From IMG/VR virus record IMGVR_UViG_3300041411_000178, positions 124,001-188,000 of that record: DNA of 64,000 nt, one strand, 5' to 3'. The position numbers and the translations under genes are program-made. Positions 13,201 through 53,353 of the stretch are shown piece by piece. Positions within the stretch are counted from its first letter, which is position 1; every line of letters begins with the position of its first letter. The notes beneath the pieces were generated by a model. The model worked only from the letters and a program-made list of their open reading frames with translations. It did no database searches and was not told the origin of the DNA.

Positions 13201-13817
13201 CAGCGGGTGATGCCTTCTGTCTGGATTGGTTGTTCAGCTACAACGATCGTAACACTCGTCGTTGGAGTGGGAACACGATGCAACAAACCAGTACGTCGAC
13301 ACCTACCATCTGCAACACCCCTGATAACGGCATTAGTCGTTCCTTCGGGTGGGCTGACTCTACAGGGGGTGCGGCGCTGATTCAGCAAGGGCCGGTTAAC
13401 AATGCCGTCATCGGGTCGGTTTATCCGCAGACGGGTTGGGTGATCTTCTTCAAAACCGATATCAACGTGATCTTCAATGGTCGACCGTTTGTATTGCCGG
13501 CGGGTTCCATTGACTTGCGTGATATCGATCCGGCTCCACAGTTCAAAACGTTCTACATTTATGCGTTCTTGCGAGACGGTGTGGCGCAGTATGAGGTCAC
13601 CACTCTCAAGCGGCTGGAAAGTCAGTACCAGTTGTGGGTCGGTCGGGTTACCACGAATGCCAGTCAGATTCTTACTATTGACCGGTACAACGTGATCGCC
13701 ATGAACGGCCACCGCATCAGTGAGCTTAAACGCGGTAACTCCATTCCAGCTTCGTCTGGTCTGGTCAATGAGGAAGGACAAATCCCTTGGTTCTACCAGA
13801 GTGAAATCCTTCCTTAA
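10269..13817 (+). CDS. Tail fibre/baseplate protein (phiKZ gp131/gp145/gp146-like family), 1182 aa
   Basis: N-terminal IVPDHAPFF, HGLTAAQVQLEKVDNF fibre motif, GSFEG..DGR..GLY segment, C-terminal LPAGSIDLRDIDP..FYIY..GNSIPASSG domain. Confidence 0.8.
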   Translation: MHFPILREYQEDLEGRNPENKITDEPKSTPAGIWTRIIVPDHAPFFTKSLTVKAPNGQPLDLGVHYQIFSIMPRLTDLAAQPVACFIELLDENITDVLLDYHVVGEYSLIDNRMLQMIFSAVNDDRPVFWENLKNKPVVFPPDLHSHSLIRTTICWQDTLEVMDLYLAMKEANGREPTQIRIDHFFDLLTHYINVYSDMLTEFLTRHMRTNNEHGLTAAQVQLEKVDNFETANSGNVLQARSDMHLTPQGLETIIETFGFDSSQYLKTGLLPISRFGNTNFIPANIDGSFEGFGGFSETAAITLESDGSMAYLWNRFDGRTTGLYYSVLTDSEDQANGKLLYTGYKYVHPRIAIDGANVNLIAQGSGEDVILVGDNQKELYYIGVTNGSLDPAKHVYSPINLRALVSAIYNNPGPRAVSLLFPFINIALIGPWIYIFHTASTGTPVDFPQLGMDMRFKFFYRVALADVKAQIPVTATRQNITFQDAEGVQWNNSPYFRWCDRVVNGSGDVVKCLFPFVQPPNGLVSFYRSAVTLVAENPSVPGQYAMKFLGAFYAALTGATLNQQFDYVPELNYNFNPNTGVLSLTSKTNIFAVDFSKSNPKAGYEQNGMMYASVFSYAGQGGNVLADGRYAASGSPGYAGFPRLGVVSVPPGSHDRHTTISRLWGVAKDFTSKTWYETLTSPLASSVNPRAVAYVPAGEFFVAGGRDQQLYSKLFYKNIAGRFAVRPEVTNLNVGQVVSRPLTGDIRPVNALTGMGLATVVFATPYLNQFGVDVGDGAFCMSSQTKNFDRTKVGTAWPANTNNPNDVILIATHNNRIEPDGTVTIVPTLELLYPEAIVNALFAQIQFPGMATRFKIISICDPTYSAMSARAGWLPVCVSIQYAPNGGSDINTLYSTFMTIQPTYAAVNGRYQVTGFTVLDIVHGVGPGTAVYDQQRIYGSTVNYETASSMHCPMRVNYHLNGNNLQVYMGSGIMGNTAGDAFCLDWLFSYNDRNTRRWSGNTMQQTSTSTPTICNTPDNGISRSFGWADSTGGAALIQQGPVNNAVIGSVYPQTGWVIFFKTDINVIFNGRPFVLPAGSIDLRDIDPAPQFKTFYIYAFLRDGVAQYEVTTLKRLESQYQLWVGRVTTNASQILTIDRYNVIAMNGHRISELKRGNSIPASSGLVNEEGQIPWFYQSEILP

Positions 13818-13833
13818 CACTTAGGTCCGGATA

Positions 13834-13868
13834 GCCGGGGAGTATTCCTCCCTGGCGTCCTTTCTTTT
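13834..13868 (+). terminator. Intrinsic terminator
   Basis: GCCGGGGAG-tattc-CTCCCTGGC followed by a T-rich tract. Confidence 0.6.
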
Positions 13869-13884
13869 GAATAAGGTTAAAGTG

Positions 13885-16800
13885 ATGGATTCCATTCCGC
13901 TCTTAGTGTTTGACATCCGTGGTCTCAATCCTGTCAACACCATCCCCGGCGAAAAGATCCCACTCAAGGATAAGACCTTGAACTGGCTGATCCCTAACGG
14001 GGCCCCTTTCTTTAACGAACCCGGTCTGCTGGTGGTTCGTAACCAAGCGGGTGGTATTCTCACCCGTGACCGTGACTACTACGTTGAAGGTGAGTTCGTT
14101 CCTTTCTGCGAGATCACTGGTCGTTCCATTTGTACTTTTATCCGTGTCTCCGACGCCATCCTGGCTGCCAACGAATTTGTTACCGTTGACTACCAGAGTA
14201 TCGGTGCCTGGTTTGTACCCCGCAACAACCTCCAAGACTGGTTGGACCAGATGCACCGCGGCAAGACTCCGATTCCGTGGAGCAAGGTGTTCTTTGTTCC
14301 ACCAACCCTGCCGCCAGAGTACCACACTCACAACATCAAAACCGAAATCATGGACTGGTATGATTTCACCTACTTCTTCGCTCAGCTGGAAGGTATCCGC
14401 AGTACTCGGGATCCTGACTTCGATGACAAGTTGACTGCGGCAGTAGAAGACGCCTACAACAAGTTGTATGCAGCACGGGATACTCAACTCGGTATTCTGC
14501 AAGCACACGACAAGAACTACAACAACCCTCATGGTGCCGACAAGTTCGACATTGTGATGGGTAACCACGATAACTACCCTACCGCTACCCTTGCACAGGA
14601 CCTGGCAGGCGATAGGAGCGATCTTCTCAGTACACCCCATGGCGTCGTAGCCCTGGCGAAGAGTTACGTCCCAGACACCGATAAGGCGATGCTGGCGGGT
14701 ATCTTCCCCATCAGTTCGTACAGCGGTGAATCCTTTCTGCCACCGAACATTAGTGGTTCGTTTGAAGGGATGGGTCAACAGACCGAGTGTTCAGGCATCT
14801 GCCTGGAACCAAGCGGCTTGATGATGGTGCTGTCTAACCACAACGACGGCCGTACACGTGGTTTGTACTTCTCTGTTATTGAGAACTACAACCGAGACAA
14901 CATCCGGGTTACCTACAGCAACTACAAATATCGACCACCGGCTTTGACAGCGATCGGTATCGACGTAGACCGCATTATTGCGGGCAGCGGTAACAAGGTC
15001 ATCATGACGGGCGTGAACGGGACCAACGATTGGTTCATCTGTTTGACCAACGGTTCGTTTGATCCAGGTGGTCATGCTTACGTTCGCTGCAACATGAGTG
15101 CTATCACGGCGTTCTTTGGTTCGCCTTACGGCAACGCTCCAGTGTTTGGTCGCAATGACCAGGCCACTATTCACCACATGGGCACGTACCTCGTACTGGT
15201 GCAGGCTTATGTGGACAACGGTATTCCGAAGAGCCGGTTCTACCGCGTTCGTACCGCTGATGTCGTTAACGGCTTGGGCGTTACGTGGGAAGCTGTTCCG
15301 CTTACCTACCAGGACTGGGACGGCACTCAGTACAGCGGTGTGCTGGATTTTCAAGCACAAGCTGTCTTCAAGGATGGCAACAACAAGATCACTCGGTTTG
15401 GCCGGTTTACCTGCCAGCAGCCAATTGATTGGGTATCTATCCTGCGCCGCGATTTGAACTTGTCCTGGCCAGTGACAGGAGGAGGTGGCAACTACTACTT
15501 CCACACGCTTCAGTACTTCCACATGGTCTATTACGACCGCCCTGTGGATCCGCTGTTTGTTCACATCTTGCCAGGGATTACAGAGATGTACTATCTCTTC
15601 AATCCGGCTAACGGTGCAATGGCAAGGCAGGGCAAGTCACCGGCGATTACGCTCGATTTCTTGAACATGACCCCGGCCAATGAAGAATTGGGTATTCGTC
15701 AATATCGCCACGTCTATAACCAATTGGTCGCGTATCAACAACCGTCGACGGTGTTGCTCTCAACCGGTGAACTAGTGTCGACGTGTGTGTTTGAAGGTGT
15801 AGCGGAGTTCCCTTGCCGTATCAATACGCTCAAGATGCAAGGAATCACCAACGCTGAGCAGTGGATGTCCAGGATGATGGACAGCGACACCACAGCAGTG
15901 GCGCGTAATGTGCTTCACGTTCCGTCGGTGCAACCAGCGACAAGGAACGGTGTGTACACGTCCAGCATGTCGTTCGAAGCTGACGGTGAAGTGTTTGCTG
16001 CTGCTGACATGTCAACACCTGATCTGTTGCGTAAGGTGTTCTTCCGCAAGGTAAGCGGCGGGTATGCAATCCGAGATGGCGTTAACAACCTGACCCTGGG
16101 CCCGAACATGTACTCTCGCCCACTGACTACCGAGATCTATTCAACCAACTTAACCCGTGTCGACGGTATGTTGGGGATCACTGGTACGGGTGCAGAACTG
16201 GCAGCGGCTGGGGTGGATCAGGGTAGTGGTTCGGCTAGCTTCTGTGGTTACTCCAGTCTTTACCCAGCAAGCCAGCATTTACCACAGTGCCCAGAGCTGC
16301 GTGCACCGGCCGGCGGTAACGTTTTGGTCTCTTTCCCACGGACGTACACCAAGTCGCTGGATACGATCAACAAGGTGGCAACCTACTCGGCAACCAGCTT
16401 CTATGGTTTCCGTCAGAACGTCATCGACCAGATCAGAGCGTTAACCGGTAATGCCAGCAAGTGGTCATTCACGGTTAACCATCTGGGTGCGGAGAACGGT
16501 GGGATGTTCCGTGGTTTAAATCACTCGGTGGTCATGGTCAACTGGATTGTTGAGGGTACTGGGCGTTTCCGTTCTCGGGTGTTGATCGGCACTCCTGCTG
16601 TTGAGGCGCCGAATGCAAACCATCCGGGTGTGTACCTCATCACGGCCTTTAACTGGGTGTCTGCGCCTGCTGATGTCTCCACTTGCCCTTGGGCAGTGCT
16701 GCAAGGCTACGAGCAGTGGCAGAAATTGGACACCATCTACGTGGCTAAGCCGTTGTTGACAGCGTATCGCGATGGTAACTACATCAAGATCCTGATCACG

Positions 16801-17487
16801 TCCGGCTATGAGCATGTGGTGGCAACGTCTCGTCAAGTACCAGTCTGTCTCTTTGACCTGAACCTGGGTAACAGCCAGATTGAAAACCTGGCAGTAGGTT
16901 CGGTTGCTCGAGATCGAGGGGACCCAGCTGTTATGTGGCCGGGTGTGGGTATGACGGATCTCAGTGTCACAAACCAGGATGGTTTCGACGGCAAGTTGAT
17001 CACGCAGACGTTGTTCCCATACACCTACACGGGTGGTGGCGCGGCGATTCACCTGAAGACAGGGGTCGGTTACATTATCCCTACGTCGGTGTATCCGGAA
17101 ATTGGCTGGCTGCTGTTTATCCAGGACAACATCCGGATGATGATCAACGGGACGGCTTACTCTATCCAGGGTGGCACCATCGACCTGCGGGACATCGATC
17201 CAGCGCCTCAGAACAAAACGTTTTACATGTACGCAACAATCGAGGATGAAACTCCTAAGTATCTGTTGTCGTCAGTACAGCTGCGTAAGAGCGGTTCTCT
17301 GCTGCGGGTAGCGACCATCGTTACCAACGATAAACAGATCTTGACCATCACTCGTGAACAACCGTTTATGGTGGGCGATCTGCTGCTGAGCTATACCCGT
17401 GAAGGTGGGACGATTCCTATGTCCGCGGGCTACCCTCAGGATGAAGGCTTGTTTGTATTCCTTCATCAAGGTGAGTTGTTACCTTAA
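13885..17487 (+). CDS. Tail fibre/baseplate protein, paralogue of the upstream gene (about 1200 aa)
   Basis: Same architecture: LIPNGAPFF, GSFEGMG..DGRTRGLY, C-terminal GGTIDLRDIDPAPQNKTFYMY..GGTIPMSAG. ATG 13885 preferred over TTG 13867. Confidence 0.8.
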   Translation: MDSIPLLVFDIRGLNPVNTIPGEKIPLKDKTLNWLIPNGAPFFNEPGLLVVRNQAGGILTRDRDYYVEGEFVPFCEITGRSICTFIRVSDAILAANEFVTVDYQSIGAWFVPRNNLQDWLDQMHRGKTPIPWSKVFFVPPTLPPEYHTHNIKTEIMDWYDFTYFFAQLEGIRSTRDPDFDDKLTAAVEDAYNKLYAARDTQLGILQAHDKNYNNPHGADKFDIVMGNHDNYPTATLAQDLAGDRSDLLSTPHGVVALAKSYVPDTDKAMLAGIFPISSYSGESFLPPNISGSFEGMGQQTECSGICLEPSGLMMVLSNHNDGRTRGLYFSVIENYNRDNIRVTYSNYKYRPPALTAIGIDVDRIIAGSGNKVIMTGVNGTNDWFICLTNGSFDPGGHAYVRCNMSAITAFFGSPYGNAPVFGRNDQATIHHMGTYLVLVQAYVDNGIPKSRFYRVRTADVVNGLGVTWEAVPLTYQDWDGTQYSGVLDFQAQAVFKDGNNKITRFGRFTCQQPIDWVSILRRDLNLSWPVTGGGGNYYFHTLQYFHMVYYDRPVDPLFVHILPGITEMYYLFNPANGAMARQGKSPAITLDFLNMTPANEELGIRQYRHVYNQLVAYQQPSTVLLSTGELVSTCVFEGVAEFPCRINTLKMQGITNAEQWMSRMMDSDTTAVARNVLHVPSVQPATRNGVYTSSMSFEADGEVFAAADMSTPDLLRKVFFRKVSGGYAIRDGVNNLTLGPNMYSRPLTTEIYSTNLTRVDGMLGITGTGAELAAAGVDQGSGSASFCGYSSLYPASQHLPQCPELRAPAGGNVLVSFPRTYTKSLDTINKVATYSATSFYGFRQNVIDQIRALTGNASKWSFTVNHLGAENGGMFRGLNHSVVMVNWIVEGTGRFRSRVLIGTPAVEAPNANHPGVYLITAFNWVSAPADVSTCPWAVLQGYEQWQKLDTIYVAKPLLTAYRDGNYIKILITSGYEHVVATSRQVPVCLFDLNLGNSQIENLAVGSVARDRGDPAVMWPGVGMTDLSVTNQDGFDGKLITQTLFPYTYTGGGAAIHLKTGVGYIIPTSVYPEIGWLLFIQDNIRMMINGTAYSIQGGTIDLRDIDPAPQNKTFYMYATIEDETPKYLLSSVQLRKSGSLLRVATIVTNDKQILTITREQPFMVGDLLLSYTREGGTIPMSAGYPQDEGLFVFLHQGELLP

Positions 17488-23995: not shown

Positions 23996-24093
23996 TAAGT
24001 GGTAGAGATAACGACTTGTTATCTCTTTTAGTTGTATTCGTACTGCAAGGTCCTGTTTATGACAGCCTATTACTTCTGGAAGAGATAACGATC

Positions 24094-24375
24094 ATGCAAA
24101 GCGCACAGATCCCAATTGTACAAAACCTCGACGGTTCCTACACACCCAGCGATCAAGGCATGGGTTTTGCGGTAGTGACCTACAACTACGACATCAGCGG
24201 CAAGACTGCTATCATCAACTTCGCCGGTGTCAACCAGGCGGTCGTCACGTTCGATGAAACCGGCACCATGGTGGTGTCCTACCACATGCTGAACATGATG
24301 GCGTCGGCACAAGACATGGCATCGGTGGAAAACATCTCCCGGTACCTGGCAACCGCTTCTGCTACTCTGCACTGA
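24094..24375 (+). CDS. Hypothetical protein (93 aa)
   Basis: ATG 24094 after AGAGA; strongly biased codons. Confidence 0.65.
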   Translation: MQSAQIPIVQNLDGSYTPSDQGMGFAVVTYNYDISGKTAIINFAGVNQAVVTFDETGTMVVSYHMLNMMASAQDMASVENISRYLATASATLH

Positions 24376-24382
24376 GTTCCTT

Positions 24383-24853
24383 ATGAATGTATTGAGGTTC
24401 TTCAGTGCGAACCCTGATCAGTTCACGGAACCTTTTGAACCAGTAGTGGCGCGCTTTGCGTTGGCTGGGCAAAAGGTTCTGGTAGAATTGGGGCTCGTTA
24501 AGGATAACGACAGGCTGTACTTCTCGATCGGGAAACGATTGACCAGCGATGGACCGCTAATAATTCTGGACCGGGTGCCTGTGTCATCCGTGTCACAACA
24601 GACGTTTACGGCTCGCCCTGAACGCTGGAATGAAAGTAAGTTGTACGGGCGTGAGTTCTTGCGACATGCCTTTGAACACTTTATTTTGAATTCGCCATTC
24701 TCTGGCTTTATAAGAAAAAATGTGAATCCACTGGATATCACGCTGTTGTTTGCCAACCTAAGGAACATCAGTTCCGACTTAATCAACTTTCAATTGGGTA
24801 TAGGTCATGAAAAAGGACGACGTGATTGTACAGTACAAAGCGTTGGTTCGTGA
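24383..24853 (+). CDS. Hypothetical protein
   Basis: 156-aa ORF filling the gap in a co-oriented operon. Confidence 0.5.
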   Translation: MNVLRFFSANPDQFTEPFEPVVARFALAGQKVLVELGLVKDNDRLYFSIGKRLTSDGPLIILDRVPVSSVSQQTFTARPERWNESKLYGREFLRHAFEHFILNSPFSGFIRKNVNPLDITLLFANLRNISSDLINFQLGIGHEKGRRDCTVQSVGS

Positions 24854-25244
24854 GCTTGGAGAGAACGCCCACAACGTAGTACTGAGCGCAGGGGCTGCCG
24901 CTGTCATGATGGGCATCCGTGAAGAAACAAATGATTTAGATGTAGACGTGCTGTCCGGTGTATTCAAGTGGGCGGCTACGACCAAAACAGTTTTGAAAGA
25001 AGAAGGGGTCAGCGATCGGGTGCTTTACGCCGAAAGTATTGATCTGCACGTACTGGACGAAGATCGGGGAAGGGTCTGCGTCGAGGGTGTGTGGATCTAT
25101 AGTCCTCGTGAATTGATCCTGCAAAAACGTGCAATGTCCAAGTTCCCTGGTCGTCCTATCGGCAAGTTGGTCCAAGACCAGGTCGAGATCGCCCAGCTGG
25201 AAGCCATGGGAAACTCAACGAAATTCACTGCTAAAGTTGTCTAG
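24807..25244 (+). CDS. Small Pol-beta-superfamily nucleotidyltransferase-fold protein A
   Basis: VVLSAGAAAVMMGIREETNDLDVDV (G-x..hDhD) and C-terminal LILQKR. Confidence 0.65.
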   Translation: MKKDDVIVQYKALVRELGENAHNVVLSAGAAAVMMGIREETNDLDVDVLSGVFKWAATTKTVLKEEGVSDRVLYAESIDLHVLDEDRGRVCVEGVWIYSPRELILQKRAMSKFPGRPIGKLVQDQVEIAQLEAMGNSTKFTAKVV

Positions 25245-25253
25245 GGAAACACC

Positions 25254-25718
25254 ATGTTTAAACTTGAAGTAGAAGTCTGGCAGGAATCGGAAAATCGCAT
25301 CCTGAAACAACTGGCCGCTCTGAACAGTCTAGGAGTTCCCGCAGATCAAATGTGCGTGGGCGGTAGTTCTGCAATGGTACTGATGCAACTGCGTAACGAC
25401 GCCGGTGATCTGAATGTCTGGGTAGACTCGCCGTATTTCGAGCGTCTGGCCGAAGATTACCAGGTTCTGGTACACCCACTGCGCGATTCAGTGGTTCGTA
25501 TCCCTGACACCAACCTGTGTGTCCGTCGTCGTAACCGTTATTTCAAGAGTCATGCCTTGGAGAACGGCGTGGAAGTGTTCGATGAACTGACGCTCCTGTT
25601 GCAGAAGCGCACCAGCTACATCGATCCAGAAAGACCCATGGCTCAGCGTAAGGATGACTTCCTCGACATCCGCATCCTGAACAACCGGTTGGCCGAACGT
25701 AACAAAGTTGCATCCTGA
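25254..25718 (+). CDS. Small nucleotidyltransferase-fold protein B, paralogue of A
   Basis: MCVGGSSAMVLMQLRNDAGDLNVWV (DxN) and LLLQKR..RKDDFLDIRIL. Confidence 0.6.
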   Translation: MFKLEVEVWQESENRILKQLAALNSLGVPADQMCVGGSSAMVLMQLRNDAGDLNVWVDSPYFERLAEDYQVLVHPLRDSVVRIPDTNLCVRRRNRYFKSHALENGVEVFDELTLLLQKRTSYIDPERPMAQRKDDFLDIRILNNRLAERNKVAS

Positions 25719-25720
25719 CT

Positions 25721-25757
25721 GATTAGGCATTGGTGGGTAACTCCCCAGTGCCTAGTC
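25721..25757 (+). terminator. Terminator-like hairpin
   Basis: GATTAGGCATTGG..CCAGTGCCTAGTC after the stop codon. Confidence 0.55.
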
Positions 25758-25791
25758 TTATAGCGCATTTTGATTTTTAAGGATTACAAAT

Positions 25792-26046
25792 ATGTGGGTT
25801 ATTTGGACTGTCTTGGGCTGCATTGCCATCGTCATTGTGAATAACTGGACGTTCATCAACGTTATGATTCATCGTTACCGGTTCCCTGACTTGGGTCCTC
25901 AGGCAACGGTAGACAAGTTGTTAAAAGAAGTCAACGGCTATTTAGCCAGTGACGACGACCTTGTTTATTGCCGTGACTGCGACGGTAAAGTGCCAGGAAC
26001 GAAGGCTGCCATGATCACAGCGATTGTCAAACAAGAAGGATTATAA
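25792..26046 (+). CDS. Small membrane protein
   Basis: N-terminal hydrophobic helix; CRDC motif; AAGGA RBS. Confidence 0.6.
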   Translation: MWVIWTVLGCIAIVIVNNWTFINVMIHRYRFPDLGPQATVDKLLKEVNGYLASDDDLVYCRDCDGKVPGTKAAMITAIVKQEGL

Positions 26047-26048
26047 AC

Positions 26049-26342
26049 ATGCCAGAAATTGTGGCCATGCTTCTGGGCTTAGGTTGCTTTTTCTTTTTCC
26101 TTGAGATGACAACAGGTCCGTGGAAGTGGCTGGATCGTTTAACCGGTTGGGATGATCATCCTGACGAGAAAGAAATCAACGCGATCTGCTTGCGCCTATT
26201 ACTGGAGCAAGAGGATCTTAGTATCAACATTCAGAACCGTGTCGTCTGTAACGAATGTAAACGCGAGAGCTGTGGGTTTTGTACCAACGGCCGTGTTATT
26301 CGTCAGGCACAGGAACTGCTCGATAAGAGGAGCGAGTTATGA
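26049..26342 (+). CDS. Small membrane-anchored Cys-rich protein
   Basis: N-terminal TM, C-terminal CNEC..CGFC putative Zn site. Confidence 0.6.
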   Translation: MPEIVAMLLGLGCFFFFLEMTTGPWKWLDRLTGWDDHPDEKEINAICLRLLLEQEDLSINIQNRVVCNECKRESCGFCTNGRVIRQAQELLDKRSEL

Positions 26343-28282
26343 AAGTCCCCAGTATCTTTGAGGAGATGAGAACTCTCCAAGAGGAGATCACTCGCCTCAA
26401 CACCGAGTTCCACCAGAACGACAAGGAATTGATCCCCAACGCTGAGTTCGATCAAAAGCAGTTGCGGTTTGATGAACTGTGCGAACTCTACCCTGACATT
26501 GCCAGGAGCCTGGTTACCGACAACGCCCCTGTCCCCATGGCTGCTCCTACTGCCGGGCTGGACCTGGTGGAATTCAAGGAACCCATGCTCAGCCTCAAAA
26601 AGGCCACGAGTATTGAGGCCCTGGACAAATGGCTGGCCAAACTCCCAGCGGACGTCACAGTTATCTGGGAGTTAAAGCTGGATGGCTTGGCGTTGGACTT
26701 GTTGTATGAGTTCCGTCAATTGGTACGGATGTGTACACGTCGGGATGGGTTGTTTGGTGAAGATGTAACTCACTCGATTAACCTGTTCAACAACATACCC
26801 CTGACGCTGCCTCCAGGCTACCCTGACGAGTTTTCTATTCGGGGTGAGGGGATATTGCCGTTTGTTGCATTCGAGGCCTACAACGAGGCTGTAGAGAAGC
26901 CTATGGTGACTCCTCGTAATGCGGCGAGTGGTTGGGTGCGTACCAGTCGGGGTAATCAGAACCCAGAAGCTGTGGGTAAGCTGCGCTTTATTGCATACGG
27001 CTCCAGTGAACGGTTTGATGCCAAGACCTACATGGACCAGCGGAAGATGTTTCGGGAAGCTGGGTTTGAAGTATCACCCGTGCTTTCGTTAGAACAGCTC
27101 AAGAGCGGTGAACGCGACGACGTCTTACCAACTGACGGTGTAGTGGGTAAGGTCAACAACTTCGAAACCCAGGAAGAGTTGGGTGCAACCAACAAGTTTC
27201 CTAACTGGGGGATTGCCTACAAGTATCCGGACGAAGAAGTCGAAGCGGTCTACGACAGAACCATCTGGAAAACGGGCAAGACCGGTCGGGTTAACCCAAC
27301 GATCCTCTACCATCCGGTTAAAGTAGGTGGTGTGACCTGTAGTCGAGCCAGCATCGACAACTATCACCAATTCATGGAGCTGGGGCTGCGTGAGGACTGC
27401 ACCCTGGCGGTTCGTCGTAACAACGATGTTATCCCACGGGTTCACCGCGTTATTGAGCCTGGCACGGGTGAGCGGGTTAAGGCCCCAGAAGAATGCCCAA
27501 GCTGTGGAAGCGTGCTTCGACTCAAGACCAGTGATGCAAGCGCCTTTCTATATTGCGACAACGTTACTGGTTGCAAGAGTCAGTTGTTGAATCGCTGCTT
27601 GGCTTTTGTTAGTCGTGGGGCGCTGGACATCGACGGGTTGGGCCCGGTGGTATTGGCCGAGCTTATTGATGACGGCACCATCGAATACCCGGCCGATATC
27701 CTCTACTTGAATCCTGCGGAAATCTCACCTAGGACCTGGGCGAACATCATGGAGGTTACCTCGGTTCCGTTGCATAAAGCAATCATGGCCATGGGGTTAC
27801 CTGGTGTTGACGTTATCCGCGCTAAGAAGTTGGCCGTGGCTGTTAATGAAGCGGGCGTCAAGATCTGGCCGCCAGAACTGACACATTGGTTGGGTAACAA
27901 AGACAACCTGAAAAAGATCAGGGGTATCGGCGACAAGCTAGCGACGCCTATCGCTAAAGCGCTGGAAACCTCGGCTATCCAGCTTAACGCTAACCGACTG
28001 TTTAAACAGGTTCAACCGTTCTACAGGGAGGATAAAACTGAACGGAAGATCTGTATCACCGGTGACGTGGGACTTCCACGCGAAAGCTTAAAGGAACTCC
28101 TGGAATTGGCGGGTATTGAATTGGCGGATAGTTTCACCAAAGACTGCCAGTTACTTCTCGTGGGGGAGAAACCAGGTGAAAAGAAACTGTTAAAAGCAAC
28201 CGAGCTGGACATACCTATGGTAACTATCGCCAGGGTTTCCAGTATTGAAGAGTTGATCGATCAGATCAACAACCATAACTAA
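26339..28282 (+). CDS. ligA: NAD-dependent DNA ligase
   Basis: PMLSL, ELKLDG adenylation motif, PRNAASG, DGVVGKV, AYKY, CPSCG..C..C zinc finger, HhH GLG/GIG repeats, C-terminal BRCT (ICITG). Confidence 0.97.
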   Translation: MKVPSIFEEMRTLQEEITRLNTEFHQNDKELIPNAEFDQKQLRFDELCELYPDIARSLVTDNAPVPMAAPTAGLDLVEFKEPMLSLKKATSIEALDKWLAKLPADVTVIWELKLDGLALDLLYEFRQLVRMCTRRDGLFGEDVTHSINLFNNIPLTLPPGYPDEFSIRGEGILPFVAFEAYNEAVEKPMVTPRNAASGWVRTSRGNQNPEAVGKLRFIAYGSSERFDAKTYMDQRKMFREAGFEVSPVLSLEQLKSGERDDVLPTDGVVGKVNNFETQEELGATNKFPNWGIAYKYPDEEVEAVYDRTIWKTGKTGRVNPTILYHPVKVGGVTCSRASIDNYHQFMELGLREDCTLAVRRNNDVIPRVHRVIEPGTGERVKAPEECPSCGSVLRLKTSDASAFLYCDNVTGCKSQLLNRCLAFVSRGALDIDGLGPVVLAELIDDGTIEYPADILYLNPAEISPRTWANIMEVTSVPLHKAIMAMGLPGVDVIRAKKLAVAVNEAGVKIWPPELTHWLGNKDNLKKIRGIGDKLATPIAKALETSAIQLNANRLFKQVQPFYREDKTERKICITGDVGLPRESLKELLELAGIELADSFTKDCQLLLVGEKPGEKKLLKATELDIPMVTIARVSSIEELIDQINNHN

Positions 28283-28295
28283 GGGACGCAACCTC

Positions 28296-29762
28296 ATGAC
28301 CACCGCTACTGAAAAGAAAGCAAATGCAACCGAACAACAAGCTGCTCTGTCCAAACTTCCCATCCCGCACGTCAATCCAAAGCAAGTGGAAAAAGCGGCT
28401 AAAACGCTTGAGAAAGTTGCCAACAAAGGTCAAGCGGTTTCTACTGATCAGCCTAAATCGGTAAAGGTTGTTAATAGCAGTGTGTCGGGTACCAACGGCA
28501 CTCGTGCAAAGCCGAAGGTCGAAACCGTCGCGCAGGCCGTCGACCGCATGAAAGGTGCGGAGGGTGCTGATAGCTTCAACGATACCTGGGTACCGGGTGG
28601 TGGTATTGCTATCAAGTACTACACCAAGGAAGAGCTGGCCCAGATCAAAACGCCTTGGGTCATGGTCAAGGGCGTCCTGCTGGAGCCAAAACAAGTCGGC
28701 ATCAAGGGCGCTGGTCGCATTACCACCGAATCCGGCCACACCTTCTGGCTGAACTCGTTCATGTCCCCTCGCCGCAAAGATGTCGAGACCGTCTTCTCGC
28801 ATTACATCGTTGAATGCGACGGCGTCACCGTGCACATGCTGTTGGATGAGAAGTCCTCGGCTCAGGTTAACAGCTTCGACGCGCATCGCGGTGGCATGGG
28901 TGGCCAGGAAGTCAGCCGTCACATGGTAAACCAGGCTATCCTCATCAACACCGATAGCACGCATGACACCTACTTGGGTGAAGTGCACCTGGAAAACCAA
29001 TCGACCCACAGCTGCGTTTTCAACCAGGCGACTGTCAACTCCAACCCTCGTTACGAAGATCGTTACAAAGCGCCGTGGTTGGTTCAACAGTCCCGCGATA
29101 ACCCACGCCGTGAACTGCGTTACTCGACGCTCACCCGTTCGTCGGTGTTCAACTCCACGATCACCGATACGATCCAGCTGCTGGACACCACCCTCGACGA
29201 AGCCAACATCAAAACCAACGAAGGTTTTGTAGCGGTCAGCTCGTCGGTGAAGGAATGCACCATCAAGGGTATCCGTGCGAAGCTGAAGTTTGCTCGCCTG
29301 GAAAAGACCTACATTCCGTCGAACGGTCACGTGCTGATCGTCAACACCAACATGAAGGACGAGTCTCTGGGTGACAAGCCTGTCTACATCCCGAACAAGT
29401 TCTGCACGCTGAAAGTTGACCTGCCGCATGATCATCTGTCCATGCGCCGCGAGAACGCGACCAAGGTCGGTATTACCATCGGCTACCGCACTGCTGTTGA
29501 CCTCGACATCGATGCCCCGATGGACGTGATCGACGCCAAGGTGCGCGAAGTGCTGCGTGACTCCAGTTACCACAACCCGCTCGATCCGGACATGAAGGAC
29601 CCGGTCGTGGCAAACCTGATCCATTATGTAGTGCAGAACATTCGTTCGCGTCTGCGCGTTATCAAGATGCTGGACAGTGTTGTGCGCACCTCTCGCGTTG
29701 TGACCGGTGAAGTTTACCGCGAAGACGAAGAGATGCACGGCTTCTACCCGCAGCGTTTCTAA
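28296..29762 (+). CDS. Hypothetical protein (488 aa)
   Basis: Strong codon bias; low-complexity Lys/Ala N-terminus; no family recognised. Confidence 0.75.
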   Translation: MTTATEKKANATEQQAALSKLPIPHVNPKQVEKAAKTLEKVANKGQAVSTDQPKSVKVVNSSVSGTNGTRAKPKVETVAQAVDRMKGAEGADSFNDTWVPGGGIAIKYYTKEELAQIKTPWVMVKGVLLEPKQVGIKGAGRITTESGHTFWLNSFMSPRRKDVETVFSHYIVECDGVTVHMLLDEKSSAQVNSFDAHRGGMGGQEVSRHMVNQAILINTDSTHDTYLGEVHLENQSTHSCVFNQATVNSNPRYEDRYKAPWLVQQSRDNPRRELRYSTLTRSSVFNSTITDTIQLLDTTLDEANIKTNEGFVAVSSSVKECTIKGIRAKLKFARLEKTYIPSNGHVLIVNTNMKDESLGDKPVYIPNKFCTLKVDLPHDHLSMRRENATKVGITIGYRTAVDLDIDAPMDVIDAKVREVLRDSSYHNPLDPDMKDPVVANLIHYVVQNIRSRLRVIKMLDSVVRTSRVVTGEVYREDEEMHGFYPQRF

Positions 29763-29816: not shown

Positions 29817-30299
29817 ATGAGCAAAAAAGAACCCCCTATTACCTACAAGGTGCACACGGACGGCAGTGCTCTGGGTAACCCAGGCCCTGGAGGTTACGGG
29901 ATTGTAGCGAGATGCGGAGACGAGGTTGTCACACTCTCGAAAGGCTTTTTCCGGACCACCAACAACCGTATGGAGTTGCTTGCGGTAATCGTTGCGCTGG
30001 AGGAGTTTGCTAAACCGGGTACTGTCTTTGAAATCACGACAGACTCCATGTACGTGATCAACTCGGCCACCAAGTGGTTGAACGGTTGGGCGCGTAGCAA
30101 TTGGATTGCCTGGAAGACGCAGGAGCCTATTAAGAACCAAGACCTGTGGAAACGTCTTCAGCCGCTGCTGAAAGCCAACAAGGTTAAGTTCTTTTGGGTT
30201 CGTGGCCATACGGGTGTTGTGGATAACGAAATGGCGGATAAGCTGGCAGTAGCGGCGGCTAACAATCCGACTGACACTGATGAAGGTTTCCTGGGGTAA
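29817..30299 (+). CDS. rnhA: Ribonuclease HI
   Basis: HTDGSALGNPGPGGYG, TTNNRMEL, TDSMYV, KNQDLW, WVRGHTG..NEMADKLA. Confidence 0.97.
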   Translation: MSKKEPPITYKVHTDGSALGNPGPGGYGIVARCGDEVVTLSKGFFRTTNNRMELLAVIVALEEFAKPGTVFEITTDSMYVINSATKWLNGWARSNWIAWKTQEPIKNQDLWKRLQPLLKANKVKFFWVRGHTGVVDNEMADKLAVAAANNPTDTDEGFLG

Positions 30300-30304
30300 A
30301 ACTC

Positions 30305-30523
30305 ATGCAGTCACTAACGTCTATTTACAAGATTGAGCCCGGGACTGTACTGCCGGTGTTTCTGCTAAAGATTCTTCGATCTTCCAGGGTTGAGCCAGCA
30401 TTTATGGCAGCAAAGGTAATTGGACTGGGTACTGAGCGCGATGCGATCGAAAGGATCCATCACCGCATGCAGCGAAACCATATCCAGAGTGTTCAGGTCT
30501 ATCGATTCATGGTGGTCAAATGA
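30305..30523 (+). CDS. Hypothetical protein
   Basis: 72-aa ORF tiling in the operon. Confidence 0.5.
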   Translation: MQSLTSIYKIEPGTVLPVFLLKILRSSRVEPAFMAAKVIGLGTERDAIERIHHRMQRNHIQSVQVYRFMVVK

Positions 30524-30747
30524 GCAACGAATGTTACATCTGCAAGAAAATGCTGGACGATGATGAGGGTGAGGAGTTCTTCCCTTATGAACTTCCCCAC
30601 CTACCGAACGAGAACCTGATGGTGTGTTCGGTCTGTGAAGATTCTGACGAGCACAAAAGTAACTTGGATTCTGATCGTTGCAATCGAGCGGCAGAAGAAA
30701 GCTACCAGGAATGGTGTGCTGACAACAACAACGATGACGATGACTAA
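30520..30747 (+). CDS. Small Cys-rich acidic protein
   Basis: CYIC..CSVC putative Zn finger, acidic tail, ATGA overlap. Confidence 0.6.
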   Translation: MSNECYICKKMLDDDEGEEFFPYELPHLPNENLMVCSVCEDSDEHKSNLDSDRCNRAAEESYQEWCADNNNDDDD

Positions 30748-30773: not shown

Positions 30774-31697
30774 ATGGAATCTAAGGGCATGGAGAACAAA
30801 CCAGTCTTGTGTATTTACCACAAAGACTGTCTGGACGGTATTGGCGCTGCATGGGTGGTGTGGCGCCACTTCAATAACCTCGGTATTGACATCGAGTTGG
30901 TGGCCGCCGCCTACAACGACAAGATGCCAGACGTTACCGGGAAGATGGTTTACGTGGTGGATTTCAGTTATTCACGTGAGCTCATGGTGTCGATGCTGGA
31001 GCGTGCGCATGATGTGGTGGTACTGGATCACCACACCTCTGCGAAGAAAAACCTCGAAGGTCTCTTTGTTGTAGACGAGAGTCACTCGGGGGCAATGCTG
31101 GCGTGGAAGTATTTCAACAGTGATATTCCACCACCAGAAGGTTTGCTGTATGTTGAAGACCGCGATCTGTGGCAGTTCAAATACCCGAACACCAATTACT
31201 GGGTAACCGCGGCTTTCTCCTATCCGTTCAACGTGCAGCAGTTCGATGCACTGATGAACTCCGATCCACTGGACCTCATCGCTGAAGGTCGTATCCTGTT
31301 GCGTAAGCATGAACAGGACACCACTCGCGTCTCGATGAATGCCCGCATGATGAAGTGCCTGGGCTACGACGTTCCTGTGGTCAACGCCAACATCTTCTTT
31401 GCGTCTGACCTGGGTGACATGCTCTCCAAGGACTATCCGTTCGCACTGGTGTACATGGACCTACCTAAAGGCCGCAAGTATTCCATTCGCTGCCAGAAAG
31501 GCCGTATGGACGTTTCCAAGATCGCTGAGTACTTCGGTGGTGGCGGTCATGCCGATGCGTCGGGTTTCACGATCCGTTACGACGACAAGCGTTTCAAGCG
31601 TTGCCATGAAGTACTCGACTATTCACTACGTGACAAGGTCATGGCTTTCGCAATGCATCCGGTCATGGCTCTGAAGATGCTGCTAGGGAAGAAGTAA
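30774..31697 (+). CDS. DHH/DHHA1-family phosphoesterase
   Basis: YHKDCLDG, VVDFS, LDHH, DRDLWQF, SIR and FGGGGHADASGF motifs. Confidence 0.9.
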   Translation: MESKGMENKPVLCIYHKDCLDGIGAAWVVWRHFNNLGIDIELVAAAYNDKMPDVTGKMVYVVDFSYSRELMVSMLERAHDVVVLDHHTSAKKNLEGLFVVDESHSGAMLAWKYFNSDIPPPEGLLYVEDRDLWQFKYPNTNYWVTAAFSYPFNVQQFDALMNSDPLDLIAEGRILLRKHEQDTTRVSMNARMMKCLGYDVPVVNANIFFASDLGDMLSKDYPFALVYMDLPKGRKYSIRCQKGRMDVSKIAEYFGGGGHADASGFTIRYDDKRFKRCHEVLDYSLRDKVMAFAMHPVMALKMLLGKK

Positions 31698-31991
31698 ATG
31701 AAAAACAAGGCCGTTAAGTTCTTTCGCCATGCAAACGTGTGGCGTTATAAAGAGATCGGCAAAGACGTTGCGGATAAGGTAGATACACATGCCCTGGAAA
31801 ACATCCTGGGGGTCATGGGTGGTCCGCTGGTATATGTCTGCCGAGAAACCGGTAAGCCAGAACTTACCAAACTGCGCATTGAGTTGCGTAACGGGTTTAT
31901 CATCCGGGCTTCCGAAGCCGAGAGTGATGACGTTCCTTTTGCAGAAGGCACTGAGGTGGAAGAGTTCTTTATCCGCCCTTTGATGAATTAA
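31698..31991 (+). CDS. Hypothetical protein
   Basis: 97-aa ORF abutting the upstream stop. Confidence 0.6.
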   Translation: MKNKAVKFFRHANVWRYKEIGKDVADKVDTHALENILGVMGGPLVYVCRETGKPELTKLRIELRNGFIIRASEAESDDVPFAEGTEVEEFFIRPLMN

Positions 31992-31994
31992 GAG

Positions 31995-32171
31995 ATGACA
32001 CTCATGGAAAGCGAATTCCTGTTCCACGTATACGCTGACGGTTATGGCTTCGGTACACCGTTTCATCCTGAACAGTATCTCATTCAGGAGCAAGCCTGCC
32101 ATCGTTTGAGGGCGCGCATTAAATCGGGTAATACCCTGGTGCGTGTGGAAGTCAAACGCAAGCAGGACTAA
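31995..32171 (+). CDS. Hypothetical protein (58 aa, not in ORF track)
   Basis: MTLMESEFLFHVYADGYGFGTPFHPEQYL..; fills the operon gap exactly. Confidence 0.5.
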   Translation: MTLMESEFLFHVYADGYGFGTPFHPEQYLIQEQACHRLRARIKSGNTLVRVEVKRKQD

Positions 32172-32176
32172 CCGCG

Positions 32177-32626
32177 ATGGAATTGGACTACAGTTATGTC
32201 AGCGTGCAGCTCAAACAAGAGTTTCAGGCTGAGATCATTTCGAAGTTGATTCTGGCAGGTATTGCACCAGAGTCGAAACACGAACTGCATTGCACCATGG
32301 TTTATGATGAGCGGGATATCGCCGCTCCGTTGTGTAACTTGGTCCCAGCGTCTCAGGAATTCAGGGCGAACATTATTTCTCTGGATACCTTGGGCGATGG
32401 TCTGGTGTTCCACTTTACCAGTACCGACATGCTGGAAGAGTTCCGGCGTTTGAAGGAAGGCGGTTACGTCCACTCCTTTGGAACGCCGTTGTTCCACATG
32501 TCGTTGAAGTATGACTTCGACAAGTATGAAGTCCTGGCTCTGAACAATCTGTTCGGTGATTGGGGTGGACGTACGTTGGTCTTCCATAACGAGCAGTTCG
32601 GCGTTAAGAAACCCAAGAAGAAATGA
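32177..32626 (+). CDS. acb1: 2H phosphoesterase, Acb1-like (anti-CBASS nuclease homologue)
   Basis: Two 2H motifs, LHCTMVY and FHMSLKY. Size (149 aa) and layout (YVSV..H-x-T..LV..S..H.F..H-x-S/T-L-x-Y) match T4 Acb1/gp57B. Confidence 0.8.
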   Translation: MELDYSYVSVQLKQEFQAEIISKLILAGIAPESKHELHCTMVYDERDIAAPLCNLVPASQEFRANIISLDTLGDGLVFHFTSTDMLEEFRRLKEGGYVHSFGTPLFHMSLKYDFDKYEVLALNNLFGDWGGRTLVFHNEQFGVKKPKKK

Positions 32627-32633
32627 TCGGGTA

Positions 32634-32685
32634 CTACTCCTACTCCCTTTGCGGGGAGTAGGAGTAGGTTACCTTTATTTTTTTG
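32634..32685 (+). terminator. Intrinsic terminator
   Basis: CTACTCCTACTCCC-tttgcg-GGGAGTAGGAGTAG plus T tract. Confidence 0.8.
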
Positions 32686-32761: not shown

Positions 32762-32902
32762 ATGAAAGCTACAATCGTGCTGGTGGGCCTCTTCAGTGTT
32801 ATTGCGTCCTGCTGTATGGTTGTTGCGCATATGGAACCTTCTGATGGAGGTAACAGTGCCCAATACATTAGCCGGGGCATTTTGAACGCCACGAAACACT
32901 AA
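32762..32902 (+). CDS. Small secreted/membrane peptide (46 aa)
   Basis: AGGAG RBS; MKATIVLVGLFSVIASCCMVVA hydrophobic leader. Confidence 0.55.
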   Translation: MKATIVLVGLFSVIASCCMVVAHMEPSDGGNSAQYISRGILNATKH

Positions 32903-52641: not shown

Positions 52642-53283
52642 ATGGATAACTATAAAGACGGAACGATAGCGTTTGACCGTATTACAGTTTTGGGGAAGGA
52701 CTTTGTTGCGGGGACGTACAAGGACGACTTGGCTGTCTATCAATATGCCTTTGATGTTAAGCCGTTTGTAGCAGGCGGGAAGAAAAAGAAGAAGAACGCC
52801 CCAGAGAAGTATGACTATCAATGGGAAGGCTTTTTCAACATGATGGTCAACAATACCCGCATTCGACTGCATCCGGTTCTGAATGACTACGGGTTGTTCG
52901 AGATGGAAAGAAAGCTTGAGCTGCTCAAAGAGAAGATGCAGTTCTTTGTGAAGGAACTCAAGACACGCCGTAAGACACCTGCTAAGGGCGATCGTTACGA
53001 CAAGCAGTGGCTGAACAAACCGGATACCCCTTACTCAGGGCATGTGCACCTGACCATGCACAAGGACGGCGGTGGCAACCTTTCGGTAGCCGACTGTCAT
53101 AAGTCCATCCACTGGTGGGTGGACTGTTACTTAGATCCGAGTGGCAAACCCGTCTACGACGAGTACTACGAAAAGTCGTTGAAGTCGATTGAAGAGTTTG
53201 CACGTGGGTTAGGCAAGGCTTGCAAGGCAATCCAAGAATTGCGCAAGTTCTTTGCCCGTGAACTCGAAAGCTCTCAAGGTTAA
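52642..53283 (+). CDS. Hypothetical basic protein (213 aa)
   Basis: AGGAG RBS. Confidence 0.7.
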   Translation: MDNYKDGTIAFDRITVLGKDFVAGTYKDDLAVYQYAFDVKPFVAGGKKKKKNAPEKYDYQWEGFFNMMVNNTRIRLHPVLNDYGLFEMERKLELLKEKMQFFVKELKTRRKTPAKGDRYDKQWLNKPDTPYSGHVHLTMHKDGGGNLSVADCHKSIHWWVDCYLDPSGKPVYDEYYEKSLKSIEEFARGLGKACKAIQELRKFFARELESSQG

Positions 53284-53288
53284 GAGAG

Positions 53289-53305
53289 TTTCAAACCTAC
53301 ATTAT
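53289..53305 (+). promoter_or_regulatory. Phage early-type promoter motif (copy 7)
   Basis: TTTCAAACCTACATTAT upstream of the chaperonin. Confidence 0.7.
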
Positions 53306-53353
53306 TACCCTGAGATACATTGTTTATATCAACCCAGCTACGGAGATTCTTCC

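What the first reader, a model, noticed from the sequence alone, without database searches (positions are those of the whole stretch)
30774..32626. Acb1-like 2H nuclease co-transcribed with a DHH/DHHA1 phosphoesterase: candidate two-step signal-nucleotide destruction module
Seen: 32177-32626 has both 2H motifs (HCT at 32288, HMS at 32495) in the Acb1 layout and ends an operon at a strong terminator; an intact DHH/DHHA1 enzyme lies 480 bp upstream. Known: T4 Acb1 cleaves CBASS cyclic di- and trinucleotides, and DHH/DHHA1 enzymes (NrnA/GdpP type) hydrolyse short linear oligonucleotides, pAp and c-di-AMP. Inference: Acb1 opens the ring and DHH finishes the linear product or removes other alarmones. 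This would matter for a probable nucleus-forming phage, since shielding DNA would not stop signal-based abortive defences such as CBASS or type III CRISPR.
Basis: partly seen in the sequence, partly recalled or inferred. Interest (0 to 1): 0.72.

Follow-up and report, generated by a model that had tools for sequence, protein, structure and literature searches.

The report
Acb1-like nuclease near NrnB-like nanoRNase
A soil jumbo phage related to Pseudomonas phage EL carries a credible relative of the anti-CBASS nuclease Acb1 at the end of a long replication-type operon, but the DHH enzyme upstream looks like an ordinary short-RNA exonuclease, and nothing shows that the two work as a pair.

Summary
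Window 32177-32626 encodes a 149-aa 2H protein (HCT at 32288, HMS at 32495). It passes Pfam's Acb1 model. Its family profile hits solved Acb1 structures at E 5e-18, and its model is closest to two phage enzymes shown to cleave 3'3'-cGAMP. A 15-bp-stem terminator follows at 32634-32667. Window 30774-31697 encodes an intact DHH/DHHA1 enzyme.

The 479-bp gap holds two small genes. The transcription unit probably runs about 8.6 kb, from about 24.0 kb through NAD-ligase and RNase H. The DHH model is closest to B. subtilis NrnB. Tested NrnB enzymes are 3'-5' nanoRNases that do not cut c-di-AMP, and B. subtilis NrnB lacks pAp phosphatase activity. The phage EL orthologue was tested in a published cGAMP/STING screen and is not among the enzymes reported active.

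DHH-2H linkage is confined to the collinear EL-like clade. Two relatives there have lost DHH but kept 2H. Five complete, more distant phage genomes have the 2H gene and no DHH. Of the 80 best viral DHH loci, 77 have no 2H nearby.

Verdict: a new member of a known family (Acb1-type phosphodiesterase) with a divergent base-stacking site and lid. The two-step module is neither supported nor excluded.

The parts
24004..26338 (+). Likely upstream boundary of the transcription unit: a terminator-like hairpin at 24004-24026 after the SbcC-like gene, followed by six small + strand ORFs
   Evidence: This is the only + strand terminator-like site before 32634.
26339..28282 (+). NAD-dependent DNA ligase (647 aa)
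   Evidence: 39% identical to phage EL gp122 'NAD-dependent DNA ligase'.
28296..29762 (+). Conserved hypothetical protein (488 aa)
   Evidence: No Pfam, PHROG or NCBIfam family. Homologue of EL gp123, conserved in position in all EL-like loci.
29817..30299 (+). RNase H (160 aa)
   Evidence: Pfam RNase_H at E 1.2e-41. Lies upstream of the 2H gene in EL, RisingSun, pTD1 and Miami.
30305..30747 (+). Two small variable ORFs: 72 aa (30305-30523) and a Cys-rich 75 aa (30520-30747)
   Evidence: The 72-aa ORF is absent from several relatives.
30774..31697 (+). Stand-alone DHH/DHHA1 phosphoesterase (307 aa), NrnB-like
   Evidence: Pfam and PHROG matches. Invariant H16, D21, D63, D85-H86-H87, D131 and G255-H259. 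Model pLDDT 93.9. Best Swiss-Prot fold match is B. subtilis NrnB at TM 0.70.
31698..32171 (+). Two small ORFs of unknown function: 97 aa (31698-31991) and 58 aa (31995-32171)
   Evidence: Conserved in close relatives. The 97-aa ORF is kept even where DHH is missing (L008), and lies upstream of DHH in L009-L011. No family or atlas lead.
32177..32626 (+). Acb1-family 2H phosphodiesterase (149 aa) with catalytic H38-x-T40 and H107-x-S109
32634..32667 (+). Intrinsic-terminator-like hairpin (15-bp stem, 4-nt loop) followed by a T-rich tract

Best explanation
The 149-aa protein is a divergent member of the Acb1 family of phage 2H phosphodiesterases. It most likely does what its two closest solved relatives do. 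It would bind a cyclic di- or trinucleotide immune signal (CBASS type, possibly cA3 of type III CRISPR) in the U-shaped cleft. It would then cut a 3'-5' bond without metal, using the H38/T40 and H107/S109 tetrad, via a 2',3'-cyclic phosphate, to give an inactive linear product. That would blunt signal-based abortive defence, which a phage nucleus cannot block.

The DHH/DHHA1 protein is most likely an NrnB-type exonuclease for short oligonucleotides. It would recycle 2-5-mers to mononucleotides, for example RNase H primer fragments or RNA-decay products.

The two genes sit in one long operon (NAD-ligase, RNase H, DHH, 2H) because the EL-like lineage inherited that gene order, not because they form a dedicated pair.

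**Shown here:** homology, fold, intact motifs, gene order and its distribution. **Inferred:** substrates, the anti-defence role, and the role of the DHH.
For: **2H protein**
- Pfam Acb1 is above its cut-off for the query and matched by all 50 family members.
- The family profile hits Acb1 chains 9q2g, 7t26 and 9q2y at E 5e-18, 7e-17 and 2e-15. Its other two hits are not 2H enzymes: a phage portal protein at E 2e-6 and a chance-level match at E 0.64.
- The same profile scores T4 57B/Acb1 at 57 bits.
- The AF2 model (pLDDT 93.2) is closest to Burkholderia phage BCSR5 PDE-9 (TM 0.79), then FBB1 Acb1. Both cleave 3'3'-cGAMP (PMC9117128; 10.1101/2025.08.21.671373).
- Y7 and F101 align with the stacking residues Y12 and F107 of Acb1.
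- In RaK2-like phages the homologue sits among NAD-salvage, Sir2 and Nudix genes.

**DHH protein**
- All catalytic motifs are invariant.
- The best fold match is NrnB, at TM 0.70 and rmsd 4.2. All other DHH classes score 0.56 or less.
- The sources name several homologues NrnB or nanoRNase.

**No coupling**
- and 78/79 show the linkage is clade-limited.
- In small phages the DHH's neighbours are dNMP kinase, DNA methylase, integrase and DUF2303.
Against: - No enzymology exists for this subfamily.
- Two of the four base-stacking residues of Acb1 are not kept. W74 is Leu or Met here, and the C-terminal tail has no Trp.
- The N-terminal lid of PDE-9 is also absent (alignment).
- Some structural groups of viral 2H enzymes cleaved none of 18 messengers tested (10.1101/2025.08.21.671373), so the substrate could differ.
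- Across distant jumbo phages the conserved neighbours of the 2H gene are DNA ligase and RNase H. That would also fit a nucleic-acid-end processing role.
- The NrnB assignment rests on a predicted-versus-predicted fold comparison at 21% identity.
- The negative result for the EL DHH comes from a human-cell assay whose expression level for that construct I could not read.
Confidence: 0.55

Rival explanations
1. The 2H enzyme opens cyclic oligonucleotide rings, and the co-transcribed DHH enzyme then degrades the linear products (or other alarmones). Together they form a dedicated two-step signal-destruction module.
For: - The genes share a tightly packed operon.
- DHH lies 0.04-1.3 kb upstream of 2H in EL, in 8 of 9 IMG/VR relatives and in L017.
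- There is one independent co-occurrence in a small phage contig: L091, DHH and canonical Acb1 3 kb apart.
- Two-step degradation (ring opening, then a nanoRNase) is the established route for c-di-GMP and c-di-AMP turnover in bacteria (PMC6256023, PMC9779919).
- A peat metatranscriptome contig of a relative runs from DHH into 2H. This is weak evidence.
Against: - The linkage is only as wide as the collinear block LigA-RNase H-...-2H.
- RisingSun and L008 keep 2H without DHH.
- Five complete genomes with 2H have no DHH anywhere (control).
- 77 of the 80 best DHH loci have no 2H within the flanks. One hit in 77 is roughly what I would expect by chance; that is my own rough estimate from the 273 phage Acb1 proteins counted in PMC9117128, not a measured background.
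- Linearisation alone already inactivates the signal (PMC9117128).
- Acb1 products carry a 3'-phosphate or 2',3'-cyclic phosphate. Tested NrnB enzymes act from the 3' end, and B. subtilis NrnB lacks pAp phosphatase activity (PMC12709177, PMC2731908).
- Complex prediction gave no answer.
Confidence: 0.12
2. The DHH enzyme is itself a cyclic-dinucleotide phosphodiesterase (GdpP/CdnP-like). It acts in parallel with the 2H enzyme and widens the range of signals destroyed.
For: - The fold matches GdpP, Rv2837c/CdnP, TM1595 and PggH at E about 1e-9 to 1e-10.
- A 2026 preprint shows that a mimivirus DHH degrades 3'3'-cGAMP in vitro, and that one phage DHH blocks 3'3'-cGAMP signalling in a cell reporter assay (10.64898/2026.07.21.739742).
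Against: - Those fold matches have TM of only about 0.45-0.55, against 0.70 for NrnB.
- Tested NrnB proteins do not cut c-di-AMP (PMC12709177).
- The EL orthologue (YP_418158 = Ph_DHH_7B) was in that screen and is not among the enzymes reported to block cGAMP signalling.
Confidence: 0.1
3. The 2H protein is not an immune-signal nuclease. It is an end-processing enzyme: an RNA 2',3'-cyclic phosphodiesterase, or a phosphodiesterase for ADP-ribose-1'',2''-cyclic phosphate (Appr>p). It would serve the neighbouring ligase/RNase H nucleic-acid machinery or NAD/ADP-ribose metabolism.
For: - The conserved upstream neighbours across EL, RisingSun, pTD1 and Miami are DNA ligase and RNase H.
- 25 of 50 family members also touch Pfam 2_5_RNA_ligase2.
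- The fold hits after Acb1 are the plant Appr>p cyclic phosphodiesterase, Usb1 and LigT.
- The RaK2-like homologues sit beside Sir2 and Nudix genes.
- The W74 and W147 stacking residues are missing.
Against: - Sequence-profile hits to solved 2H enzymes are to Acb1-type ones only.
- Fold similarity to Acb1-type enzymes is clearly higher (TM 0.79 against 0.67 or less).
- The protein has the compact size of Acb1, about 150 aa.
- Acb1 enzymes themselves pass through and hydrolyse a 2',3'-cyclic phosphate, so the two activities are not exclusive (PMC9117128).
Confidence: 0.2

Closest known systems
2H PDE-9 of Burkholderia phage BCSR5 (PDB 9Q2G/9Q2Y; Doherty et al. 2025 preprint)
   Same: Best sequence-profile hit (E 5e-18) and best fold hit (TM 0.79). 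Same compact 2H core and same H-x-T / H-x-[TS] tetrad. The window protein has a helix (residues 116-125) between the second motif and the last strand, where T4 Acb1 shows an alignment gap; the high TM suggests PDE-9 shares it, but I did not check this directly. In its authors' hands PDE-9 cleaves 3'3'-cGAMP and largely spares 2'3'-c-di-AMP.
   Different: About 18% identity. The window protein starts 5 residues before strand 1, so it lacks PDE-9's 15-residue N-terminal lid. The Trp equivalent to Acb1 W74 (kept in PDE-9) is Leu here.
Acb1 of phages T4 (gp57B) and FBB1 (PDB 7T26/7T27; Hobbs et al. 2022)
   Same: Same Pfam family (PF23474) and same PHROG (phrog_755, labelled 'RNA ligase' in RefSeq for both T4 57B and EL gp126). 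Catalytic His/Thr(Ser) tetrad kept. Y12 and F107 equivalents (Y7, F101) kept.
   Different: 18% identity to T4; pairwise profile comparison is not significant. W74 becomes L72. There is no Trp-containing C-terminal lid; instead there is a short Lys-rich tail. The E141 equivalent is uncertain. Different genomic context.
NanoRNase B (NrnB, B. subtilis YngD; COG2404)
   Same: Best fold match for the DHH protein (TM 0.70). Stand-alone DHH + DHHA1 domains joined by a long helical linker. DHH and GGGH motifs present. Short C-terminal region, like the NrnB-B/C classes that prefer short RNAs (PMC12709177).
   Different: 21% identity. Lacks the extension of more than 100 aa of B. subtilis-type NrnB-A. 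Clade-diagnostic residues were not compared, and activity is untested.
Viral DHH phosphodiesterases surveyed in 'Conserved folds enable immune antagonism' (2026 preprint)
   Same: The EL orthologue (39% identical, same genomic position) is one of the phage DHH proteins tested there (Ph_DHH_7B). The ordered inter-domain helix matches the preprint's description of groups 4/5.
   Different: Only a mimivirus DHH and one other phage DHH were reported to block 3'3'-cGAMP signalling. The EL protein was not.

Membership tests
Acb1 (PF23474, phage anti-CBASS 2H phosphodiesterase) | Score above Pfam's curated cut-off; detectable homology to solved Acb1 proteins | tested here: met
   28.5 bits against a cut-off of 27, which is marginal for the single sequence. 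All 50 family members match PF23474, best E 5.9e-22. The family profile hits 9q2g at E 5e-18 and 7t26 at 7e-17, and scores T4 57B at 57 bits.
Acb1 (PF23474, phage anti-CBASS 2H phosphodiesterase) | Compact 2H fold with a central beta-sheet cleft | tested here: met
   Model pLDDT 93.2. Foldseek top hits are 9q2g (TM 0.79), 9q2y and 7t26/7t27.
Acb1 (PF23474, phage anti-CBASS 2H phosphodiesterase) | Catalytic H-x-T / H-x-T tetrad (T4 H44, T46, H113, T115) | tested here: met
   H38 and H107 are invariant in 50 sequences and T40 nearly so. The second motif is H-M-S (Ser for Thr).
Acb1 (PF23474, phage anti-CBASS 2H phosphodiesterase) | Base-stacking aromatics Y12 and F107 | tested here: met
   Y7 is nearly invariant. 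F101 (Phe, Tyr or Trp in the relatives compared) aligns with T4 F107.
Acb1 (PF23474, phage anti-CBASS 2H phosphodiesterase) | Base-stacking W74 and lid W147 | tested here: not met
   W74 aligns with L72 (Leu or Met in the jumbo-phage relatives). The C-terminal tail has no Trp.
Acb1 (PF23474, phage anti-CBASS 2H phosphodiesterase) | Flexible terminal lid closing over the ligand (C-terminal in Acb1, N-terminal in PDE-9); E141 adenine contact | tested here: inconclusive
   There is no N-terminal extension. A conserved 7-8-residue [FY]-G-x-K-K tail follows the last strand. The alignment to T4 residues 137-152 is unreliable.
Acb1 (PF23474, phage anti-CBASS 2H phosphodiesterase) | Cleavage of 3'3'-cGAMP and related cyclic di/trinucleotides; rescue from CBASS | not testable with these tools
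   No biochemical data were found for the EL-type subfamily. Relatives pTD1 gp030 and EJP2_129 are listed but not among the numbered (purified) PDEs in 10.1101/2025.08.21.671373.
NrnB-type nanoRNase (DHH/DHHA1) | DHH and GGGH motifs with metal-binding Asp/His | tested here: met
   H16, D21, D63, D85-H86-H87, D131 and G255-G258-H259 are invariant in 41 sequences.
NrnB-type nanoRNase (DHH/DHHA1) | Global fold closer to NrnB than to NrnA, GdpP or RecJ | tested here: met
   NrnB O31824 gives TM 0.70, rmsd 4.2 and E 4e-15. NrnA, GdpP and RecJ give TM 0.44-0.56. Both structures are predictions.
NrnB-type nanoRNase (DHH/DHHA1) | 3'-5' exonuclease on short RNA; no action on c-di-AMP or pAp | not testable with these tools
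   Known only for bacterial NrnB proteins (PMC12709177, PMC2731908).
   The genes are linked only in the EL-like collinear clade. DHH is absent from RisingSun, pTD1, Miami, EJP2 and Hallingskeid (control) and from L008. 77 of 80 DHH loci lack a 2H gene.

The most novel reading that the evidence does not exclude
The EL-type subfamily lacks both the W74 stacking residue and a Trp lid. It may have a shifted specificity suited to nucleus-forming phages, for example cA3 or other type III CRISPR or CBASS trinucleotides. The NrnB-like DHH kept next to it in the EL-like clade may then clear the 3'-phosphorylated linear products, so that the pair acts as a real two-step pathway. That would be the first enzymatic anti-signalling system described in a chimallivirus-type jumbo phage.
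Probability: 0.1. Interest if true: 0.6.

Novelty: new member of a known kind. Interest (0 to 1): 0.32.

Why it matters
Nucleus-forming jumbo phages shield their DNA, but they remain exposed to defences that act through diffusible nucleotide signals. A 2026 review states that Tad1 is so far the only anti-defence protein described in jumbo phages (PMC13282480). A conserved Acb1-type enzyme in the EL, RisingSun, pTD1 and Miami lineages would be a simple, testable second example. Its altered base-stacking site could also say something about how substrate choice evolves in this family. The proposed DHH partnership would be new if true, but the present evidence does not favour it.

Tried and rejected
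- **Single-sequence search of the 2H protein against PDB** gave only spurious repeat-protein hits. A family profile was needed.
- **hhalign of the close-relative profile against T4 Acb1** was not significant.
- **megablast against the phage collection** found nothing.
- **The search for related loci with the broad 2H alignment** failed because no stretch was conserved enough.
- **Complex prediction of DHH + 2H** returned 'no answer'. It counts neither for nor against binding.
- **Atlas search for the 97-aa ORF** gave only sub-threshold leads.
- **NCBIfam** gave no family above its cut-off for any of the five proteins.
- **RNA-type sequencing runs** hold only contigs of relatives. Three of the four runs are probably DNA. 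One peat metatranscriptome contig spans DHH to the start of 2H but cannot prove a single transcript.
- **The 'putative structural protein' label on RisingSun gp120** was checked against the RisingSun paper. gp120 is not mentioned there and is not among the mass-spectrometry detections shown in the passages I read.
- **RecJ-like ssDNA exonuclease for the DHH** was considered and rejected. Only the N-terminal 90 residues give weak RecJ model hits, and the protein lacks RecJ's extra domains.
Full report
**1. What is there**

The window is bases 124001-188000 of a complete 224,004-bp viral record with direct terminal repeats. Identical DNA occurs in soil and rhizosphere metagenomes.

Around the finding, the + strand carries a gap-free string of genes:

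| Coordinates | Product |
|---|---|
| 26339-28282 | NAD-dependent DNA ligase |
| 28296-29762 | conserved hypothetical protein, 488 aa |
| 29817-30299 | RNase H (Pfam E 1.2e-41) |
| 30305-30747 | two small ORFs |
| 30774-31697 | DHH/DHHA1 protein |
| 31698-31991 | ORF, 97 aa |
| 31995-32171 | ORF, 58 aa |
| 32177-32626 | 2H protein |

Intergenic distances run from -4 to 54 nt. A hairpin with a 15-bp stem follows at 32634-32667. The previous + strand terminator-like site is at 24004-24026. So the probable transcription unit is about 8.6 kb and about 14 genes, not a two-gene operon.

**2. The 2H protein**

- *Family match.* It passes Pfam's Acb1 model narrowly (28.5 against 27 bits). It belongs to phrog_755; RefSeq gives T4 gene 57B (Acb1) the same 'RNA ligase' label as the EL homologue.
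- *Family size.* An exhaustive profile search of 1.8 billion representatives found a small family: 152 clusters at E of 1e-3 or better.
- *Homology.* All 50 selected members match PF23474. Their profile hits the solved Acb1-type structures 9q2g, 9q2y and 7t26 at E 5e-18 to 2e-15; its other two hits are not 2H enzymes.
- *Fold.* A confident model (pLDDT 93.2) is closest to Burkholderia phage BCSR5 PDE-9 (TM 0.79) and then to FBB1 Acb1. The plant Appr>p phosphodiesterase, Usb1 and LigT follow at lower scores.
- *Known activity of relatives.* Both top hits cleave 3'3'-cGAMP (PMC9117128; 10.1101/2025.08.21.671373).
- *Conserved residues.* H38, T40, H107 and S109 form the tetrad. Y7 and F101 match the stacking residues Y12 and F107 of Acb1.
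- *Differences.* The W74 position is Leu or Met in this subfamily. There is no Trp-bearing C-terminal lid, only a conserved short Lys-rich tail. The N-terminal lid of PDE-9 is missing.

The protein is therefore a family member with a divergent substrate cradle, so its exact substrates cannot be read off. Two relatives, pTD1 gp030 and EJP2_129, already appear in the 2025 structure-based catalogue of phage 2H enzymes, but not among the numbered PDEs taken forward. I found no paper on the EL-type protein.

**3. The DHH protein**

- *Motifs.* All DHH-family motifs are invariant in a 41-sequence alignment.
- *Solved structures.* By sequence it is remote from every solved DHH enzyme. Its model (pLDDT 93.9) matches the stand-alone DHH/DHHA1 enzymes in the PDB about equally well, at TM around 0.5.
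- *Best fold match.* Among reviewed UniProt models, B. subtilis NrnB stands out at TM 0.70 and rmsd 4.2. Source annotations of homologues also say NrnB or nanoRNase.
- *Properties of NrnB.* Tested NrnB proteins degrade short RNA from the 3' end and did not cut c-di-AMP (PMC12709177). B. subtilis NrnB also degrades DNA 5-mers and lacks pAp phosphatase activity (PMC2731908).
- *Published test of the orthologue.* Phage EL gp125 (YP_418158; 39% identical, same position) is construct Ph_DHH_7B in a 2026 preprint that screened viral DHH enzymes for blocking cGAMP-STING signalling. Only a mimivirus enzyme and Ph-DHH-3B are reported as active.

**4. Is there a module?**

Inside the EL-like clade the order LigA, hypothetical, RNase H..., DHH..., 2H, orf378 is conserved. 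It holds in EL, in 8 of 9 IMG/VR contigs whose 2H proteins are 51-80% identical, and in L017. This is whole-block collinearity.

Within that clade, L008 and Erwinia phage RisingSun keep the 2H gene but have no DHH.

A profile search of five complete genomes that carry the 2H gene found no DHH at all: RisingSun, Vibrio pTD1, Klebsiella Miami, Escherichia EJP2 and Erwinia Hallingskeid. The same search finds the window's own gene at E 2.5e-121.

Conversely, this DHH family is abundant in viral contigs, with more than 588 matches, mostly in contigs of about 10-60 kb. Of the best 80 loci, only the two jumbo ones and one other (L091) have any Acb1-family gene within the flanks.

In small phages the DHH sits among early accessory genes: dNMP kinase, DNA methylase, DUF2303 and integrase.

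The more widely conserved neighbour of the 2H gene is RNase H and DNA ligase, seen in EL, RisingSun, pTD1 and Miami. In RaK2-like phages the 2H gene lies among NAD-salvage, Sir2 and Nudix genes.

**5. Mechanistic fit of the two-step idea**

Acb1 leaves GpAp via GpA>p (PMC9117128). These products have a blocked 3' end and are already inactive as signals. An NrnB-type 3'-5' enzyme without 3'-phosphatase activity is not an obvious follow-up enzyme. This argument is inferred from bacterial NrnB and was not tested. A structure prediction of the pair gave no answer.

**6. Verdict**

The Acb1-like call is well supported at the level of family and fold. The DHH is real but best read as an NrnB-like nanoRNase. 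The partnership is not supported by distribution, by the available published assay, or by the chemistry, though it is not excluded.

This is a new member of a known family in a phage group where such enzymes have not been characterised. It is of modest interest and easy to test.

Noticed in passing
PDB 8hds (cyanophage Pam3 portal protein), residues 481-594: The profile of the 2H family hits the C-terminal part of a solved phage portal protein at E 2e-6. This suggests a 2H-like domain fused to a portal.
   Followed up: no
L097:2853-9750 (Escherichia phage EJP2) and L098:3469-9756 (Erwinia phage Hallingskeid): In these RaK2-like giant phages the 2H homologue (31-34% identical) lies between NAD-salvage genes (nicotinamide phosphoribosyltransferase, nucleotide adenylyltransferase) and Sir2 plus Nudix genes. 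This looks like a possible counter-defence or NAD-metabolism island.
   Followed up: partly
L091:3149-4018 and L091:7059-7535: A 9.5-kb viral contig unrelated to jumbo phages carries a DHH of this family and a canonical Acb1 (131.8 bits), 3 kb apart on one strand. It is the only such case among about 77 non-jumbo DHH loci.
   Followed up: partly
window 53252-55024: A phage-encoded GroEL-type chaperonin (phrog_5725, E 1.7e-121), a hallmark shared with Pseudomonas phage EL and Vibrio phage pTD1.
   Followed up: no
window 10269-13817 and 13867-17487: Two adjacent paralogous giant proteins (1182 and 1206 aa, both phrog_3573 with N-terminal virion or tail-protein similarity).
   Followed up: no
window 30305-30523: The 72-aa ORF after RNase H is variable. 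It is absent from several close relatives, and contigs of relatives join 30299 directly to 30528.
   Followed up: partly
window 30520-30747: A 75-aa ORF with two Cys-x-x-Cys pairs and a strongly acidic C-terminus (zinc-ribbon-like). It has only weak PHD or zinc-finger hits and phrog_8344 at E 1.5e-4.
   Followed up: no
window 31698-31991: The 97-aa ORF stays near the 2H gene even where the DHH is lost (L008), and lies upstream of the DHH in L009-L011. No family, structure or atlas lead.
   Followed up: partly
window 32763-32902: A short ORF just after the terminator has a hydrophobic N-terminus followed by Cys residues, possibly a small membrane protein or lipoprotein.
   Followed up: no
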